NCBI RefSeq assembly: GCF_001194135.2 | Contig: NC_068986.1 | Location: forward strand, 6,426,788-6,490,787 | Reading direction: 5' to 3' | Source of the DNA: Octopus bimaculoides | Taxonomy: Eukaryota | DNA: 64,000 bases | Part shown: positions 2,705 to 59,331 of the stretch, piece by piece | How the letters are laid out: the number at the start of each line of letters is the position of its first letter | Numbering within the stretch: the first letter of the stretch is position 1 | Translations under genes and position numbers: made by a program | The notes under the pieces: generated by a model | The model's input: the letters and a program-made list of their open reading frames with translations, nothing else | What the model was told of the DNA's origin: nothing | The model's database searches: none

Positions 2705-3138
2705 TATTGGGTCATCCTATAAATAATGCTGGTTTTTCAATTGCATGAACTAAAAGTCGAGGGGGGATGGGATAAACTACCTGCATCAACTTCCTATAAA
2801 AGCAGGTGGTAGTTTTACCTTGGCCTTATTTTTAGTGCAAGTTTTGAAGAGTGCGGTTCAATTTTAACAGTTATTTTTTCAAAGTTATAATGGAAGTGAC
2901 AAAGGAGCATATTCAGCGTATTTTACTGAATGAGTTCAATAAAGGCAACAATGCAACAAAAAGTGCAAGGAATATCAATGCAGTATATGGGGATTGGATA
3001 GTAAGTGTAAGTCAATGTCAACGGTGGTTCCAGAAATTCCGAGCCGGACACTACAGCCTAGAAGAAGAGCCTCATCCTGGAAAATCTGTAGAGCTCGATG
3101 AGGACGTCCTGCAAACCCTGGTGGAACAAAAACCCATA
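2705..3138 (+). mobile_element. 5'-truncated-to-HTH mariner remnant (left TIR plus N-terminal transposase HTH)
   Basis: TA-TTGGGTCATCCTATAAATAATG left end. ATG at 2890 reads MEVTKEHIQRILLNEFNKGNNATKSARNINAVYG...CQRWFQKFRAGHYSLEEEPHPGKSVELDEDVLQTLVEQKP, a Mos1-type HTH; the similarity ends at about 3138. Confidence 0.88.
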
Positions 3139-3189
3139 CAAATTAAAATACTATGTAAGGTAGTGAAATTAAAGTCAAATACCATACAT

Positions 3190-3600
3190 GTCAGTATGTG
3201 GCAGAGAATTGCTTCCCAATTACAGGGTTTTGGGGTCCAATTCCACAGCATTGCATCTTAGCCAAATCTCTTCTACTATAGCCTCAGCCTGATCAAAGCC
3301 TTATGAATGAATTTGAATGATGGAAACTCTAAGAAGCCCATTGCATATGTGTGTGTGTGTGTGTGTGTGTGTTTGTGTGTGTATGTTTGTTTGTTCCCAG
3401 CACTCTTGATAATAGGTGTTGGTGTGTTTACATCCCTGTTACTTAGCAGTTCGGTAAAAGAGACTGATACAATAAATACCTGGTTTTTAAAAAAAGCAAA
3501 CAATTAGTATTGGTGTTGATCCATTTAACTAAACATTCTTCAAGCCCGTGCCTCAGCATTGTCACAGACTTAGGACTGAAACCAAAAAATAATGATAAAG
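3190..3600 (+). mobile_element. tRNA-derived SINE family A (degenerate)
   Basis: Shares the body ...cttctactatagcctc...gatggaaact..agaagccc (GT)n ...gtgtttacatccc..aacttagcagttcg... with other copies. Confidence 0.7.
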
Positions 3601-10620: not shown

Positions 10621-10981
10621 TGTATTTTATTTGATAAAATAGAGAGAACCGTTGCTGCTGCTCCCTTTAGTGGCTGCTTACACGGGAGGTAGGTAGCTGC
10701 GGCTACTAACAACAGTAACACATATCCATCGTCAAAACTGCTGGTAGAAACCCCCAACAGTTTTACAGAAGCGGAGAGAGAGAGACAGACATTACCGGTT
10801 TTGTTTTACCCTCTCAAGAACCTCCAAGTTTCTTCTCTACATCAGACGGGAAATATAGTAAAACTAAAAAAAAACAAACAAGCAACCAAATATATATATA
10901 TACATAAATGTATATATAATTATTTTTATAGAAGATTATAAAATATATATATTCAATAACACATCTTAAGACATAGCCAAC

Positions 10982-10993
10982 ATGTCGAGATGA
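10982..10993 (+). promoter_or_regulatory. Micro-uORF (Met-Ser-Arg-stop) whose TGA overlaps the UGCG ATG (ATGA)
   Basis: gccaacATGTCGAGATGAcc: ATG at 10982 has A at -3; the stop at 10991-10993 overlaps the main ATG at 10990-10992. Confidence 0.55.
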
Positions 10994-11087
10994 CCATAGT
11001 CCATTTAGTTTTGACAGGTATATCTATCATCACCCTATGTGGATGGTGTTTTGTATGGTTCATCCATTTGTGCGCTCTTATATACGG
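10990..11087 (+). CDS. UGCG: First coding exon of ceramide glucosyltransferase (UDP-glucose:ceramide glucosyltransferase, GT21); N-terminal signal-anchor; phase-2 intron follows
   Basis: ATG at 10990 reads MTIVHLVLTGISIITLCGWCFVWFIHLCALIY-G(G) and ends at the donor CGG|GTGAGT (11088-11093). It aligns ungapped to human UGCG [33 protein letters not shown] (recalled), with M1, L6, L8, G10, W23, H26, A29, I31 and Y32 identical. The 98-nt length and phase 2 match human exon 1 as I recall it. Only 33 codons are visible. Confidence 0.85.
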
Positions 11088-12075
11088 GTGAGTAATTTTT
11101 GTGTCGTATCTTGAAACGTTTCATGTCATTATTCCATATGTCTTTAACCATTTTGACACTCTTCTTCGCTATCACCCACTCGGTAACAAGACATAACGCA
11201 CAACACAAGTGGAGATCTTATATGTATATATGTATATATATATGTATGCATATATGTATGTACGTATATATATGTATGTATATATATATGTGTGTGTGTG
11301 TATATATAAATGTGTGTATTAAGTATTCCCTTAGTTTTTACATATGGTATAATTTGCAGATTGGTTTCCTCCCCACCGACTTTGTAAGAAATGCATATTT
11401 TTTTTAATGACATTTTACAGAAATTTGCGAAAAAGTACTCAATACATGTTTTCACTGTCTCTCTGTCTGTCTGTCTCTCTCTCACCATTTCATTTGAGGC
11501 TGGTGATTCATTCTGTTACAATTCATTTTTATCTCGCTCGATGATGTCTGCTGTCATTTTACGTGATATTCTATTGTTATCTGAATGCTCGCATCAAGAG
11601 ATATAGAAAAGAAAAAACCTCTGAGTTGCGACAGTGAACTGACAACTTGTACATACTTAGGCATATATATATATGTGTGTGTGTGTGACTGCGTGTTCAT
11701 TTCATTGAGTATCGTCGATATATTCAATACCAGTGATCAGGAAATCGGGTATCACTTCGATTACAGTCTTTGTCGTTATAAACCTTTTATCACACCAACA
11801 GCCAACGCGTATCTTCTTCATTTATTCTAGAATATTTTTTTATGGAACTTTTTGTTACTTTCATATTTTTCCCTGATTGTTTTTTCTACTTTAAACCGGC
11901 TTTCCAAATCACTGAGTAACTTGGTGAACCCCCAACGTTATCGTACGATCTGGTTGAAATAGCTGACAAATTTCCCTCAAATCNNNNNNNNNNTATATAT
12001 ATATATAATAATGTTAGGGACAAAATCCAAAATTACAGGTAAAAACTCAATTAAAATCAATTTTCCCTAAAACTA

Positions 12076-24095: not shown

Positions 24096-24412
24096 TGGCT
24101 GTGTAGTAAGAAGCTTGCTTCCCAACCACATGGTTCCAGGTTCAGTCCCATTGTGTGGCACCTTGGGCAAGTGTCTTCTACTATAGCCTCGGGCTATAGT
24201 AGATTTGGTTGATGGAAACTGAAAGAAGCCCCTCATATGTATATATGTGTGTATGTATGTATTTGTGTGTCTGTGTTTGTCCTCCTACCATCGCTTGATA
24301 ATCGATGTTGGTGTCTTTACGTTGCCGCAACTTAGCAGTTCAGCATTAGATACTGATAGAATAAGTACTAGGCTTACAAAGAATACGTCCAGAGGTTGAT
24401 TTATTTTGACTA
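24096..24412 (+). mobile_element. SINE family A abutting the 3' end of the Tigger remnant
   Basis: tggctgtgtagtaagaagcttgcttcccaaccacatggttccaggttcagtcccattgtgtggcaccttgggcaagtg... Confidence 0.85.
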
Positions 24413-24419
24413 GATGCTA

Positions 24420-37851: not shown

Positions 37852-39993
37852 TTCTAGATTATATTGCTTTGCAGCTCTAAAAAGCTGAAGTAGTAATCTT
37901 TTTACAATAAATATTAATTGAAAATTTTCTTGCTACATACTCTTACTCTTTTTATATCAGTACTGCTAGAATAAGATCAATATACCTACCAAACATAATG
38001 TTTGACTAGGTGGAGTGTATTATTAAATTACTTTCTCAATAGAAAAACTGTATTTCTTTAACATTAGGTTTTTCGCTAATAAAGTGCTGTGCATGTTTCA
38101 AGATATGGAGACCATTATTGAAGTATTATTTTCTTACAGTATAGTTTGTTCACTTTTTTTTTACCTTAATTTTCTACCCTCTTGTCTCATATTAATTAGT
38201 TTTTACTTGTACAGCTTCAACAAAAGTTATTATGCAGATCCCTTTTATTAATTCCCTCATTTTAGGCATTTTTCCATAAAAGTGTGAAGGATGCAAGTTT
38301 GTACATTTGCTGTTGTTTAGCCACATATCAGCTTTGGCTGAGTAGACTCACGATAAAAGGTGTTTCAGTCATGAGCATTCTGTCCTTCTCTTGGACATTG
38401 TGTATCAAAGACATTGATGTCAAATATAGACCTTGCTATTCAAAATGATTAGGTGTAATTTGAAAGACATTTGGTTGCTATTTCTGGTAGGCCAAATCAA
38501 CTGTGTAGAGAGATTCCCTCACCAGCTTGTTTTTTCATTATATTTAATTAGTTTTGGTTTTCCTAGTTCCTGTTCTAACAGTTTTAAGTGTGTATGTAAT
38601 ATATTTCAAAATAAACTTCATTACCAATAGCTTTTTTTGGTGGTGGGGAGTTTCTAGAAAATGATCTTTCAATTGCTGTGAGTTAACTTTAGTTGAAGTA
38701 TAACTCTTATCAGAAAATACATTATCTCTATACTTAAAAGCATTTAAGAAATAATTTTCATTGTGACTTAGCAATTATTTTCCTTTATCAATGTCACAAT
38801 AATGTAAATCTGTATAATTTTTTTTTAATTCGAAATTGGTTGTTTTGTCTTTTATATCCACCTGATGATGTGAAATAATCTGTTCTAATCATCTTTCACC
38901 AATGGAGATTTAATTCATTTTAAACCAGATTATGTTAAGTCTGTTATCAATTTATTAGGCTCAAATATTCTTTTTCTGTTAATAACCTGAAACTTTTTTC
39001 AAAAGTAAGTCTTTTCAGCTTAATATTCAAAGGTGTAGTTCTTTTTTTTTCTATTTTAATATTTGAGCATATATAGCAAAGTTTCTCAAATAGATGATGG
39101 ATGATTCACTATTTTTTTTTTTTATTTTGAAATATAATTTGCTTGAAAGTAACTAGATGTGAAATAAAATAGCTGCTGTGGTGCTGGTTTTTAATAATTG
39201 ATGTTCTAACTGAAAGGGAAGTTTATAAAACACCTGTGTATATAATTCATGAATATTATATAACATACAGAAAATATTAATATAAATAGTTATTGCTTGA
39301 TATTTCCATGTTGATATGGTCTGTGACCTCACTGACAGCCCACCATTGGCATCAATAATAGGAAAGAAGCCTTCTGTTGCCACGCTTATCTCTTAAAGTT
39401 GTGGAAGCTTGCATAAACAAGGAGTTAAACATTTAAAAGTTTGGGAACAGATGGTTCATTAGTTGAATACCATTTGAAATGCAAGAGTTGATTGGTTTGT
39501 TAGGAAGGCCTTATTAATTTTACAAGTTCAGATTAGAGAATTCAATGCTATGTAAGCAATGAAATTGCTATATGCAGAAAATGTTTCAATGCAGCTGGCA
39601 AGTTGACAACTCTTGCTGAATTTGCACTGGCAGATCTGGTTTTTCTGTTCTGAATACTGATTCCTCCTTAGTTTTGAAAGCAACGAAGTATAATTTTTTG
39701 TTTTTGTTTTTAAACATTATAACAGGAAAGAGTCAAAAGAATATATTACATTCACTTGTAATTAAACAGAAGTGCACTCCTTGTTAACACACTAATAAAA
39801 TAAAAGTAGTGCATTGTATCTCTGTTGTTAAAGCCCACCCCCGCCCTCCGCTTCTAAATTCTAGGTATCCACATCATTGTTCTTTGTAGAAGAATGTTAG
39901 TCCGTTTACTTACACATGTCAAACTGGCTATGTTCATCTCTTCAGTTCTCGTTTCCTGTCTTAGTATTGCTGAAAAATATACCCATTCTGGTA

Positions 39994-57389: not shown

Positions 57390-57509
57390 TGTATTAAAAC
57401 TTAATTTGTTTTTTTTTTGTTTGTTTTTTTTTTCAATTTTCTCATTTGTATTATATAATCTTTATTTTTGTCTTTTCTAGGTAAGTGTTTGAAGCCGATA
57501 TGGGTGAGG
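57390..57509 (+). other. Candidate recursive splice site (AG|GTAAGT) with 23-nt cryptic/poison exon 57481-57503
   Basis: T-rich AG-free zone of about 89 nt ending ...tttatttttgtcttttctAG, followed immediately by GTAAGT. A second donor TGG|GTGAGG lies at 57504. Confidence 0.5.
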
Positions 57510-59331
57510 TTCTTTTATATTATTAAAAAAAAAATTATATATCAGTTGAAAAAAAAAGTAGTTTAATTTATAAATTGGTCCTTTATAAATCCATGTTACC
57601 TATATAGCTGGATTTTTCCAAAGATCCTTTTTCAATCTCTCACTATTTGTAATATTAAATCTAGTGCATTTAGTATACCTTACAACTCAAATATCTTTCT
57701 TTATACATTTCTATTCTGCTAAAAGAAAGAAGAAAAAAAAATCTGTTTTCTCTTGATTTGGCTTTGATTTCATAATCTGTTATATTTTCCACCATTATCA
57801 TGCTGTATTTCATAAAAGATTGTTTCCTGTTATCTTTGCTTTTCAGTTTTTATAAACTTTTAATTTAACATGCTGTTACAATGCTCCTCTGTTTAAAATA
57901 GTTTCTGTAATTGGTATCCTGGTTAAAAACTAGATTGATCTTTCAAACATCATTTCTAATTTTGCATCATTCTTTCACGAATATGTGTGTGTTTGTGTAT
58001 GTGGATATTCATGTGTGTATATTTATCTCAATAGTAGCTCTTATTTTTATATATATTTTAACATGACTGTCCTGTTTTCATACATTCATTTCTATTTGTT
58101 TCTGTATCAGATTTTTCTGGTATTGGGAGCTTGGATATCATTTTGTTGATATACTGAGTTTCATTGAGTTACATCAGTATTCAGTCTTATGTTGCACTTA
58201 TTTTGTTTACTTAAATTACTTATTTTTAAATATTTGTTACTGTTTGCGGTTGTAAAGACTGTTGTGATTAAAGCAAAAGGTGGACTGTAGTTTGAAAATT
58301 TCCTAGCATTCCCTCTGATTATATGTCAGTTTTATGCGTGAAATTATACAAGTATGGTTTGAAGAAGTTTCCTATTAATAGAGGAGTCCAGTGTAATCCA
58401 TGGGCAGGAGAGATGCAGCTGAAGTGTACGATAGTAGAAAGTCCAGGTAGAGAATCCGTAAAAGTTCATTGGGTGAATAGATGTCAACTGTTTTTTTTTT
58501 TTTATTAGGTAAGGTATTGCAATGCTTACTTGTTGCCGGTGCAAAATAAGGTTGTGGAAAACTGGTGTTAGTGGCTTATTTCACATGAAGTTTACAATAT
58601 TTTTTTTAGTTTATATTGAAAATGATGTAATATGCATTGGTTGTTTTTGCATTTATATTTTTTCATTTTTACTGATTATAGTATTTTAATTTTCTATTAG
58701 TCTTTTTACAATATGTACTTACAAACACACATGTAATATTTTAGTATTGTATTATGTATTGACTTTTTTTTTTTTTTTTAAATAAAAACCTGCACTTAAG
58801 AAATTTGAGAAAAACTATGATTGCTTATTGCGGTGTTAAAACTTTTAGTGGTGTGAAACTTATTCATATTTGCAGCTCTAGTTTTGTGCAGCCTGTTGTT
58901 CTTCCCATTATATTTTCAATTTTTACTTCTTTAAATCATTTATTAACACAAATATTCAGTCTTTGATTGTAAGTGATTCTCTTGGGTGCTTTTGAAGTTT
59001 GTAAAAGTGTTCTTTTGTTTTATTCATTGATGTGTGTGAGGTTGATGAAGGGGAGATGGTTATAGGAGAGTGATAGTTTGTGCTACAGTTATAGATGCTG
59101 TTTTGTGTGCATGTGCGTGCATGCATGCGTGAGAAAGAGTTGTGAGCTTGCTGATGCATTTTTGAGTTTGTTATGGTGCTAAAGCTTATTAAAATAGTGC
59201 AGAAAGAATTGCATTTATATTTACTTGCATTGATGTTTATATAAATTATGATTGTTTAGTTCTAATACTTTTGTTTTCTCTGTTGCTTGGGCTGTTTTTT
59301 TTATTAGGTTGAGTTTAGAAGTATGTTACAG

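What the first reader, a model, noticed from the sequence alone, without database searches (positions are those of the whole stretch)
57390..57509. Candidate recursive-splicing site with a 23-nt poison RS-exon deep in a giant cephalopod intron
Seen: an AG-free U-rich zone of about 89 nt with branch-point-like CTCAT/TAAT, then CTAG|GTAAGT (a strong acceptor fused to a perfect donor), 46 kb into the intron. A second donor TGG|GTGAGG lies 23 nt later. Joined to exon 1 (ending GG), the mini-exon reads GGG TAA, an immediate stop. Established: this is the ratchet-point/RS-exon layout described for long Drosophila and vertebrate introns, where the regenerated donor outcompetes the downstream one and inclusion triggers NMD. 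I am not aware of it being described in molluscs. Inference: UGCG intron 1 is removed stepwise, with a built-in NMD switch on glycosphingolipid synthesis.
Basis: partly seen in the sequence, partly recalled or inferred. Interest (0 to 1): 0.75.

Follow-up and report, generated by a model that had tools for sequence, protein, structure and literature searches.

The report
Conserved recursive-splice site in octopus UGCG
Deep inside the 73.6-kb first intron of the octopus ceramide glucosyltransferase gene sits a back-to-back splice acceptor and donor with a tiny 23-nt cryptic exon; it has been kept almost letter for letter in the distantly related argonaut while about 98% of the intron changed beyond recognition, so it is probably a recursive-splicing site, and no paper found in the library searched links recursive splicing to octopus or molluscs.

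Summary
Window 57479-57486 reads AG|GTAAGT behind a 17/20 pyrimidine tract and an 89-nt AG-free zone. A second donor, GG|GTGAGG, lies 23 nt downstream.

The window is Octopus bimaculoides CM046606.1. Exon 1 (10990-11087) matches the N-terminus of XP_052824548.1 (ceramide glucosyltransferase) exactly. Intron 1 is 73,573 nt and the site lies 46,393 nt into it.

The bare octamer is at chance level (once per strand). The composite with the pyrimidine tract is expected only 0.005-0.009 times per intron.

Conservation in O. vulgaris says nothing, because the intron background is 91% identical. Argonauta hians is the decisive comparison. Its 4-fold sites differ by 43% and only about 2% of its intron aligns. 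It still has, at the collinear position, CTAATC-(Y)n-AG|GTAAGTGTT...ATATGG|GTGAGA. The splice letters are intact, but the mini-exon interior has changed and is 27 nt rather than 23.

This is the pattern described for Drosophila ratchet points with cryptic RS-exons. No RNA evidence could be obtained.

The proposed "NMD switch" is not supported. The stop codon (GGG TAA) follows automatically from GTAAGT after a phase-2 exon.

Verdict: a likely genuine recursive splice site, and a new member of a known kind in a new phylum.

The parts
10990..11087 (+). UGCG exon 1 coding part (MTIVHLVLTGISIITLCGWCFVWFIHLCALIY + GG, ends in phase 2)
   Evidence: Matches the N-terminus of XP_052824548.1 exactly. 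It is 82% identical to the decapodiform transcript P0120.
11088..11093 (+). 5' splice site of intron 1 (CGG|GTGAGT)
   Evidence: The orthologous donors are CGG|GTAAGT in O. vulgaris and CGG|GTGAGT in A. hians.
57390..57478 (+). AG-free zone (89 nt). Its upstream half is a poly-T low-complexity run that is not conserved.
   Evidence: The T-run at 57405-57433 varies in O. vulgaris and is absent in A. hians.
57455..57460 (+). Candidate branch point ATAATC (branch A at 57458, 22 nt from the AG)
   Evidence: TAATCTTT is identical in O. vulgaris and A. hians. In A. hians it reads CTAATC, 18 nt from the AG.
57460..57478 (+). Core polypyrimidine tract (17/20 Y)
   Evidence: It is 17/20 Y in all three species. 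The gene's own acceptors score 13-18/20.
57479..57480 (+). Recursive 3' splice-site AG
   Evidence: Invariant in the three species.
57481..57486 (+). Regenerated (ratchet-point) 5' splice site GTAAGT. After ligation to exon 1 it reads CGG|GTAAGT.
   Evidence: GTAAGTGTT is 9/9 identical in O. vulgaris and A. hians.
57481..57503 (+). 23-nt cryptic RS-exon (27 nt in A. hians). Inclusion gives GGG TAA.
   Evidence: The interior has one substitution in O. vulgaris, and a 4-nt indel plus substitutions in A. hians.
57504..57509 (+). Downstream RS-exon donor TGG|GTGAGG (GTGAGA in the other two species)
   Evidence: ATATGGGTGAG is 11/11 identical in the three species. Conservation fades just after it.

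Best explanation
The element is a recursive splice site (ratchet point) with a very short cryptic RS-exon in the 73.6-kb first intron of octopus UGCG.

Proposed mechanism:
- Once about 46.4 kb of the intron has been transcribed, the branch point (TAAT), pyrimidine tract and AG at 57479-80 are recognised. U1 binding at the donor 23 nt downstream (GG|GTGAGG) helps recognition by exon definition.
- Exon 1 is ligated to 57481 and a 46.4-kb lariat is released.
- The ligation creates CGG|GTAAGT, which matches the U1 consensus better than the downstream TGG|GTGAGG.
- That stronger donor is then paired with the exon 2 acceptor. This removes the remaining 27.2 kb together with the 23 nt, so the mRNA carries no trace.
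- Occasional use of the weaker downstream donor would include the 23 nt and give an immediate TAA stop, yielding a transcript expected to be an NMD substrate.

What is shown: the sequence anatomy, its rarity by chance, its selective conservation across octopods, and its absence from the deposited UGCG products. What is inferred by analogy with flies and vertebrates: that the site is used in RNA, the order of events, and the donor competition.
For: 1. All sequence parts are present at the stated coordinates.
2. The composite is rare by chance: 0.005-0.009 expected per intron, and about 1e-4 with the nearby GGTRAG donor. In the full O. bimaculoides, O. vulgaris and A. hians introns it is the only sense-strand AG|GTRAGT with a strong pyrimidine tract.
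3. Independent test in Argonauta hians. UGCG 4-fold sites differ by 42.8% (62/145). Only about 1.3 kb (~2%) of the intron aligns collinearly. Yet at the collinear position (between anchors L004 32874->L002 46109 and L004 62471->L002 63875) the site reads CTAATCTTTTTCTTTTTTTTAG|GTAAGTGTTCATTGAAAGCTCATATGG|GTGAGA. Neutral retention of the 15 core letters (AGGTAAGT + GGGTGAG) has probability about 2e-4.
4. The pattern of conservation is a splice-signal footprint. Branch point, tract, AG|GTAAGT and GG|GTGAG are kept. The mini-exon interior is variable, with a 4-nt (non-3n) indel, and conservation ends just after the second donor. PMC8605326 describes fly RPs in the same terms: ultraconserved SA|SD, poorly conserved out-of-frame cryptic exon, stronger RP donor.
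5. Context fits. The intron is 71-74 kb in all three species, and the site lies at 61-77% of its length. Fly recursive sites occur in most introns >40 kb (PMC6110457).
6. The signals equal the gene's real splice sites.
7. The deposited proteins of three octopods, and the Logan-assembled protein P0120 and those clustered with it, run ...LIYG|K(W/Y)RL..., so the mini-exon is absent from these products.
8. No rival RNA-gene or structure signal was found, and the pattern is single-copy in each locus.
Against: There is no RNA evidence of any kind: no junction reads, lariats or saw-tooth coverage.

Only one informative outgroup (Argonauta) could be examined. Decapodiforms could not be tested, because the Sepia pharaonis locus covers only 13 kb upstream of exon 2 and has no such site there.

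The 23-27-nt RS-exon is shorter than the ~50 nt quoted for fly cryptic RS-exons (PMC8605326), which could hinder exon definition.

Donor strengths were compared only by consensus matching, not with a calibrated, species-specific model.

This is one site in one gene, so no genome-wide strand bias or enrichment could be measured.
Confidence: 0.62

Rival explanations
1. It is a conserved poison (AS-NMD) microexon. The 23/27-nt exon would be a regulated cassette whose inclusion switches UGCG output off. The GTAAGT at its start would be exonic sequence, not a donor used for recursion.
For: Inclusion gives GGG TAA directly after codon 33, with eight exon junctions downstream. Both the acceptor and the downstream donor are conserved. 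[quoted passage not shown]
Against: The stop is intrinsic to GTAAGT after a phase-2 exon, so it is not independent evidence. A perfect U1-consensus hexamer kept 9/9 directly at the acceptor is unexplained if it is never used as a donor. The exon body is not conserved (4-nt indel plus substitutions). No deposited product contains the mini-exon.
Confidence: 0.13
2. It is a conserved non-coding DNA or RNA element with a non-splicing role that merely resembles splice signals. Examples are a transcription-factor site cluster, or an intronic U1-binding site that suppresses premature cleavage and polyadenylation.
For: Intron 1 holds other Octopus-Argonauta conserved islands with no splice-like features, for example window 34795-35060 at about 83%. 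A strong U1 site in a 73-kb intron could serve telescripting (general knowledge, not tested).
Against: The conserved letters coincide one for one with branch point, tract, AG, GTAAGT and a second GG|GTGAG. They stop at those borders, and the spacer between them varies. A single U1 site would not need a conserved acceptor and a second donor. There is no structure or Rfam signal.
Confidence: 0.1
3. It is the donor of an unannotated alternative first or upstream exon that ends at ...CTAG|GTAAGT, or part of another overlapping transcript.
For: Only the longest product per gene is on record in the collection used. Alternative non-coding exons would therefore not have been seen.
Against: The sequence upstream of the AG is an AG-free pyrimidine tract with a branch-point motif, which is typical of an intron end and not of an exon. 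The conserved second donor would be unexplained. Conservation does not extend upstream of about 57449.
Confidence: 0.05
4. It is a chance juxtaposition of splice-like motifs in an AT-rich intron with no function.
For: AGGTAAGT alone is at chance frequency, once per strand. Conservation in O. vulgaris is uninformative: 57% of all intronic 8-mers are intact at 91% background identity.
Against: Retention of all core letters in A. hians at about 0.43 differences per neutral site has p of about 2e-4. About 98% of the intron has turned over. Independent re-creation in Argonauta, with the same flanking 9-mer and 11-mer, is even less likely.
Confidence: 0.05

Closest known systems
Drosophila intronic ratchet points with cryptic RS-exons (Ubx, kuz, Bx; Hatton 1998, Burnette 2005, Duff 2015, Joseph 2018/2021: PMC8605326; Pai 2018: PMC6110457)
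   Same: Juxtaposed (Y)n-AG|GTAAGT deep in a >40-kb intron. A short out-of-frame cryptic exon is bounded by a weaker downstream donor. The SA|SD letters are strongly conserved while the exon body drifts. The exon is absent from mRNA.
   Different: The phylum is Mollusca. The cryptic exon is only 23-27 nt, against about 50 nt. Use in RNA has not been demonstrated. Only one site has been examined.
Vertebrate recursive splice sites with RS-exons in long genes (Sibley et al. 2015; Blazquez et al. 2018, PMC6224609)
   Same: The RS-exon is defined first. The regenerated 5' splice site competes with the RS-exon donor. Inclusion introduces a premature stop (as summarised in PMC5126111).
   Different: Vertebrate cases are concentrated in long, brain-expressed genes with introns often >100 kb. 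Here the host is a housekeeping-type lipid glycosyltransferase. EJC dependence is unknown.
[quoted passage not shown]
   Same: One element can be resolved either as an included exon that carries a premature stop or as a zero-length recursive intermediate.
   Different: That case lies in a short intron context and was shown experimentally. Here it is an inference only.
Neuronal microexons (SRRM4/eMIC-dependent; PMC8797185)
   Same: Exon length is <=27 nt with a strong pyrimidine tract.
   Different: The length is not frame-preserving: it is 23 nt in Octopus and differs by 4 nt in Argonauta. There is an immediate stop on inclusion. No UGC motif lies next to the acceptor. The exon starts with a donor consensus.

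Membership tests
Recursive splice site / ratchet point with cryptic RS-exon | [quoted passage not shown] | tested here: met
   TTTTCTAG|GTAAGT at 57472-57486. It is the only sense-strand AG|GTRAGT in the full intron.
Recursive splice site / ratchet point with cryptic RS-exon | Functional-looking acceptor: branch point, polypyrimidine tract, AG-exclusion zone | tested here: met
   TAAT branch motif 22 nt upstream, 17/20 Y, 89-nt AG-free zone. Only 0.75% of intronic AGs reach this tract strength. It is as good as the gene's real acceptors.
Recursive splice site / ratchet point with cryptic RS-exon | Host intron is very long (fly: mostly >40 kb; vertebrates: long genes) | tested here: met
   73,573 nt in O. 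bimaculoides, 72,710 in O. vulgaris, 71,480 in A. hians.
Recursive splice site / ratchet point with cryptic RS-exon | Short cryptic exon closed by a downstream donor (exon definition) | tested here: met
   TGG|GTGAGG lies 23 nt downstream (27 nt in A. hians), and the donor is conserved. This is shorter than the ~50 nt typical of flies (PMC8605326).
Recursive splice site / ratchet point with cryptic RS-exon | Regenerated donor stronger than the RS-exon donor | tested here: inconclusive
   By consensus matching, CGG|GTAAGT is a better match than TGG|GTGAGG/A (direct reading). No calibrated cephalopod splice-site model was available.
Recursive splice site / ratchet point with cryptic RS-exon | SA|SD motif conserved across species while the exon body is poorly conserved and out of frame | tested here: met
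   Octopus versus Argonauta: AG|GTAAGTGTT and ATATGG|GTGAG are identical, and the interior has a 4-nt indel. The background is 43% different at 4-fold sites, and about 98% of the intron is unalignable.
Recursive splice site / ratchet point with cryptic RS-exon | Cryptic exon absent from mature mRNA | tested here: met
   Deposited proteins of O. bimaculoides, O. vulgaris/sinensis and A. hians, and the Logan-assembled protein P0120, read ...LIYG|K(W/Y)RL... across the exon 1-exon 2 junction. Minor isoforms cannot be excluded.
Recursive splice site / ratchet point with cryptic RS-exon | Splicing intermediates: exon-to-RS junction reads, RS lariats, saw-tooth nascent-RNA profile | not testable with these tools
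   No RNA-seq read data are accessible here.
Poison (AS-NMD) cassette exon | Inclusion introduces a premature termination codon upstream of exon junctions | tested here: met
   GG + GTAAGT gives GGG TAA, and eight further coding exons follow. The stop is intrinsic to the donor consensus.
Poison (AS-NMD) cassette exon | Inclusion isoform detectable and stabilised when NMD is blocked; the exon body is usually highly conserved | tested here: not met
   The exon body is not conserved, and no deposited product contains it. The isoform and NMD part is not testable here.
Frame-preserving neuronal microexon | Length a multiple of 3, coding, conserved peptide | tested here: not met
   The length is 23 nt against 27 nt, there is an in-frame TAA at the second codon, and the interior is variable.

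The most novel reading that the evidence does not exclude
This would be the first lophotrochozoan ratchet point. On that reading, recursive splicing through a cryptic RS-exon operates in cephalopods and has been maintained in UGCG intron 1 since the Octopus-Argonauta split. It would imply that the fly and vertebrate mechanism is either ancestral to Bilateria or recruited repeatedly wherever introns become giant. Cephalopod genomes, which are rich in very long introns, would then hold a whole unannotated class of such sites. They could be found by the same PPT-AG|GTAAGT-plus-conservation signature.
Probability: 0.55. Interest if true: 0.65.

Novelty: new member of a known kind. Interest (0 to 1): 0.55.

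Why it matters
Recursive splicing has been documented experimentally in Drosophila and in vertebrates (human, zebrafish), as far as the papers read here show. Full-text searches found no paper linking it to octopus. They found only incidental co-mentions with cephalopods or molluscs.

Coleoid cephalopods have very large genomes with many giant introns, so how they splice those introns accurately is an open practical question.

A site with the full ratchet-point anatomy, under evident purifying selection across octopods, gives a concrete locus that is cheap to test. It can be checked by RT-PCR for the exon 1-RS intermediate or by re-analysis of existing total RNA-seq. It also gives a search recipe for a genome-wide catalogue.

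It says little about glycosphingolipid regulation as such.

Tried and rejected
1. Searching the big protein collection with the exon 1 peptide failed. The 33-aa query was too short, and a padded 43-aa query found no candidate. That negative is a limit of the word index, not absence: the octopus protein was later found through human UGCG -> P0120 -> P0121 -> cluster members.

2. tblastn of human UGCG against the window did not detect exon 1 or any other exon. tblastn with the cephalopod protein P0120 found exon 1 only. Exon 2 therefore lies beyond the window, at L004 78672.

3. Conservation in O. vulgaris was examined first. It was rejected as evidence because the whole intron is 91% identical and the RS-centred windows sit at the median.

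4. The second composite at 58507 (T-run-AG|GTAAGG) is weakened in O. vulgaris (GTAAAG) and not found in A. hians. It was treated as chance.

5. Repeat or TE origin: no second copy was found in the window or in 370 kb of octopod loci.

6. Structured RNA or a known RNA family: none. There was no Rfam hit, and fold z-scores were -0.14 and -0.36.

7. Decapodiform test: the Sepia pharaonis gene model lacks the true exon 1. The locus could only be extended to 13 kb upstream of exon 2, and no site lies there. This is inconclusive, not negative.

8. A profile-free search of 1.84 billion representatives with the exon 1 peptide, aimed at reaching a Sepia exon 1 fragment, gave only low-complexity hits.

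9. An exact-pattern scan of JGI metagenome contigs found nothing.

10. O. sinensis DNA was not returned because the gene range exceeds 100 kb.

Full report
**1. What is in the sequence**

Window 57440-57509 reads tctcatttgtattatataatctttatttttgtcttttctag|gtaagtgtttgaagccgatatgg|gtgagg.
- The AG is at 57479-80 and GTAAGT at 57481-86.
- The 20 bases before the acceptor hold 17 pyrimidines, and the nearest upstream AG is 89 nt away.
- A TAAT branch motif puts a candidate branch A 22 nt from the AG.
- A second donor, TGG|GTGAGG, starts at 57504, which delimits a 23-nt mini-exon.

**2. Gene context**

The ORF piece 10990-11087 (ATG...TACGG|GTGAGT) encodes MTIVHLVLTGISIITLCGWCFVWFIHLCALIY(G).

A direct search with this short peptide failed for technical reasons. 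A human UGCG query returned a Logan-assembled protein, P0120, whose first 33 residues are 82% identical to it. P0120 as a query then returned the Octopus vulgaris ceramide glucosyltransferase P0121. The members of that cluster include:
- XP_052824548.1, 'ceramide glucosyltransferase [Octopus bimaculoides]' (P0233), whose N-terminus matches the window peptide exactly;
- an Argonauta hians protein (P0232);
- in the neighbouring cluster, a Sepia pharaonis protein (P0235).

The genomic locus of P0233 (L004, GCA_001194135.2 CM046606.1) is 100% identical to the window, with window position = L004 position + 5989. The window is therefore O. bimaculoides, the exon is UGCG exon 1, and it ends in phase 2.

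Exon 2 (cag|C AAA TGG...) lies outside the window at L004 78672. Intron 1 is thus 73,573 nt, and the candidate junction lies 46,393 nt (63%) into it.

The gap-free O. vulgaris locus (L001) shows only the nine known coding exons. All deposited products read ...LIYG|KWRL... across the junction. There is therefore no sign of a coding exon hidden in the window's assembly gaps, and the mini-exon is not in the deposited products.

**3. Is it more than chance?**

The octamer AGGTAAGT is not. It occurs once on each strand of the window, against about 0.9-1.0 expected per strand. It also occurs once per strand in the O. vulgaris intron.

The composite is. Only 0.75% of the 2,561 AG dinucleotides in the intronic part of the window have >=17/20 pyrimidines upstream. 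The full intron holds 26 such AGs. Multiplying by the hexamer frequency gives 0.007-0.009 expected composites per intron (0.005-0.006 in Argonauta). A GGTRAG donor within 15-60 nt multiplies this by a further 0.014-0.02.

The candidate's signals are as good as those of UGCG's own introns, whose donors are mostly GTAAGT and whose acceptors score 13-18/20 Y.

Across a multi-gigabase genome, hundreds of such composites would still arise by chance. Rarity within one intron is therefore suggestive, not decisive.

**4. The conservation test**

O. vulgaris keeps the site: TTTTTCTAG|GTAAGTGTTTGAAGCTGATATGG|GTGAGA. This carries no weight, for three reasons:
- the two Octopus introns are collinear at 90.8% identity;
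- 57% of all intronic 8-mers are intact;
- windows centred on the site sit at the median of the intron.

Argonauta hians is informative. Its UGCG differs from O. bimaculoides at 42.8% of 4-fold degenerate sites (62/145), compared with 4.4% for O. vulgaris. A sensitive blastn aligns only about 1.3 kb of collinear blocks, roughly 2% of the intron.

Scanning the 71,480-nt Argonauta intron for the motif gave exactly one strong sense-strand composite. It lies at L002 60332: ACCTTATTCACTAATCTTTTTCTTTTTTTTAG|GTAAGTGTTCATTGAAAGCTCATATGG|GTGAGAGTTTT. It sits between the neighbouring collinear anchors, so it is positionally orthologous.

Anchored on the junction, the comparison shows:
- Identical letters: TAATCTTT (branch motif; CTAATC in Argonauta, 18 nt from the AG), the tract (17/20 Y in both), AG|GTAAGTGTT (11/11), and ATATGG|GTGAG (11/11).
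- Changed: the mini-exon interior differs and carries a 4-nt indel, so it is 23 nt against 27 nt.
- Similarity fades upstream of the branch motif and a few bases after the second donor.

Under neutrality at 0.572 identity per site, keeping the 15 core letters has probability about 2e-4. The combined pattern AGGTAAGTGTT-N(0-12)-ATATGGGTGAG is single-copy in each of the three octopod loci.

This is purifying selection on two splice-site pairs and a branch/tract region, not on a coding or structured sequence. There is no Rfam match and no folding signal (z = -0.14 and -0.36).

**5. What it most likely is**

The footprint matches what Joseph et al. describe for Drosophila intronic ratchet points. 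Those have juxtaposed SA|SD motifs that are ultraconserved. They have a short cryptic RS-exon that must be recognised, is poorly conserved and out of frame, and is normally skipped because the regenerated donor outcompetes the RS-exon donor (PMC8605326).

The context also fits. Recursive sites occur in most fly introns >40 kb, often near the middle (PMC6110457). Here the intron is 71-74 kb and the site lies at 61-77% of its length.

I therefore take the best explanation to be stepwise removal of intron 1: a 46.4-kb segment first, then 27.2 kb from the regenerated CGG|GTAAGT. The sequence anatomy, the rarity, the selective constraint and the absence from the deposited products are shown. The actual use of the site, the order of events and the donor competition are inferred.

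**6.

The immediate stop (GGG TAA) is not an extra design feature. GTAAGT placed after any phase-2 exon reads N-NG TAA. An 'NMD switch on glycosphingolipid synthesis' is therefore unsupported. A by-product isoform that NMD would clear is the more economical reading, as proposed for vertebrate RS-exons (PMC5126111).

The long T-run in the upstream half of the '89-nt zone' is a length-variable low-complexity tract. It is absent in Argonauta. The functional acceptor region is roughly the last 35 nt.

**7. Rivals**

- A regulated poison microexon cannot be excluded and may coexist with recursion, but it does not explain the perfectly conserved donor at the acceptor.
- A non-splicing conserved element, or a lone U1 site, does not explain the acceptor and the second donor.
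- An alternative upstream exon does not fit an AG-free pyrimidine tract.
- Pure chance is disfavoured by the Argonauta result.

**8. Limits**

- There are no RNA data.
- Only one informative outgroup was available.
- Decapodiforms are untested. The Sepia pharaonis model lacks the true exon 1, and only 13 kb upstream of exon 2 could be read, with no site there.
- The 23-27-nt exon is short compared with the ~50 nt of fly RS-exons.
- Donor strength was judged by consensus only.

**9. Novelty**

Full-text searches found no paper combining recursive splicing with octopus. They found one or two incidental co-mentions with cephalopod or mollusc.

I rate this a new member of a known kind in a phylum where it has not been described. 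It rests on comparative sequence evidence and is directly testable with existing RNA-seq or one RT-PCR.

Noticed in passing
window 34795-35060 and 38813-38973 (L002 43217-43516 and 46046-46216): These are two conserved non-coding islands in UGCG intron 1. They are about 83% and 77-84% identical between O. bimaculoides and Argonauta hians, although neutral sites differ by 43%. They have no obvious ORF or splice-like borders, and one Argonauta copy has a 34-nt insertion. They are candidate regulatory elements.
   Followed up: partly
L004 5099-78671, L001 10099-82808, L002 5099-76578: The length of UGCG intron 1 is almost the same in the three octopods (73.6, 72.7 and 71.5 kb), although about 98% of its sequence is unalignable between Octopus and Argonauta.
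   Followed up: no
window 10958-10993: The 32 bases before the UGCG start codon are identical in O. bimaculoides, O. vulgaris and A. hians. They contain a 3-codon upstream ORF (ATG TCG AGA TGA, 10982-10993) whose stop overlaps the main ATG (ATGA).
   Followed up: partly
window 24346-25744 (- strand): Two adjacent ORFs match the Pfam DDE_1 endonuclease domain, so this is a broken pogo/Tigger-like transposase. The region is collinear with O. vulgaris, so the insertion predates the split of the two Octopus species.
   Followed up: partly
window 2851-3261 (+): An ORF carries the HTH_48 domain of Mos1/mariner transposases (E = 7.5e-19). It lies upstream of UGCG and is a transposon remnant.
   Followed up: partly
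window 58507-58514: A second, weaker acceptor-donor composite (13-nt T-run, TTAG|GTAAGG, 16/20 Y) lies 1 kb downstream of the main site. It is degraded in O. vulgaris (GTAAAG) and not found in A. hians.
   Followed up: yes
L003/L005 (Sepia pharaonis CAHIKZ030001802.1), gene model CAE1274798.1: The deposited Sepia pharaonis UGCG model starts MAIVAKKTWLIAW from a spurious first exon about 3 kb upstream of exon 2. Logan-assembled proteins of the same 90% cluster begin MTIVDLVGTGLSVITLCGWCFVW..., so the true exon 1 is missing from the model and lies more than 13 kb upstream.
   Followed up: partly
window 7494-51618 (11 N-runs, 3,838 nt in all); 30392-31717: The window carries assembly gaps of 10-972 nt. 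The largest (30550-31521) is flanked by a tandem repeat with a 42-nt unit, which translates as ...ISHLPYPTCHIPLA... in long spurious ORFs.
   Followed up: no
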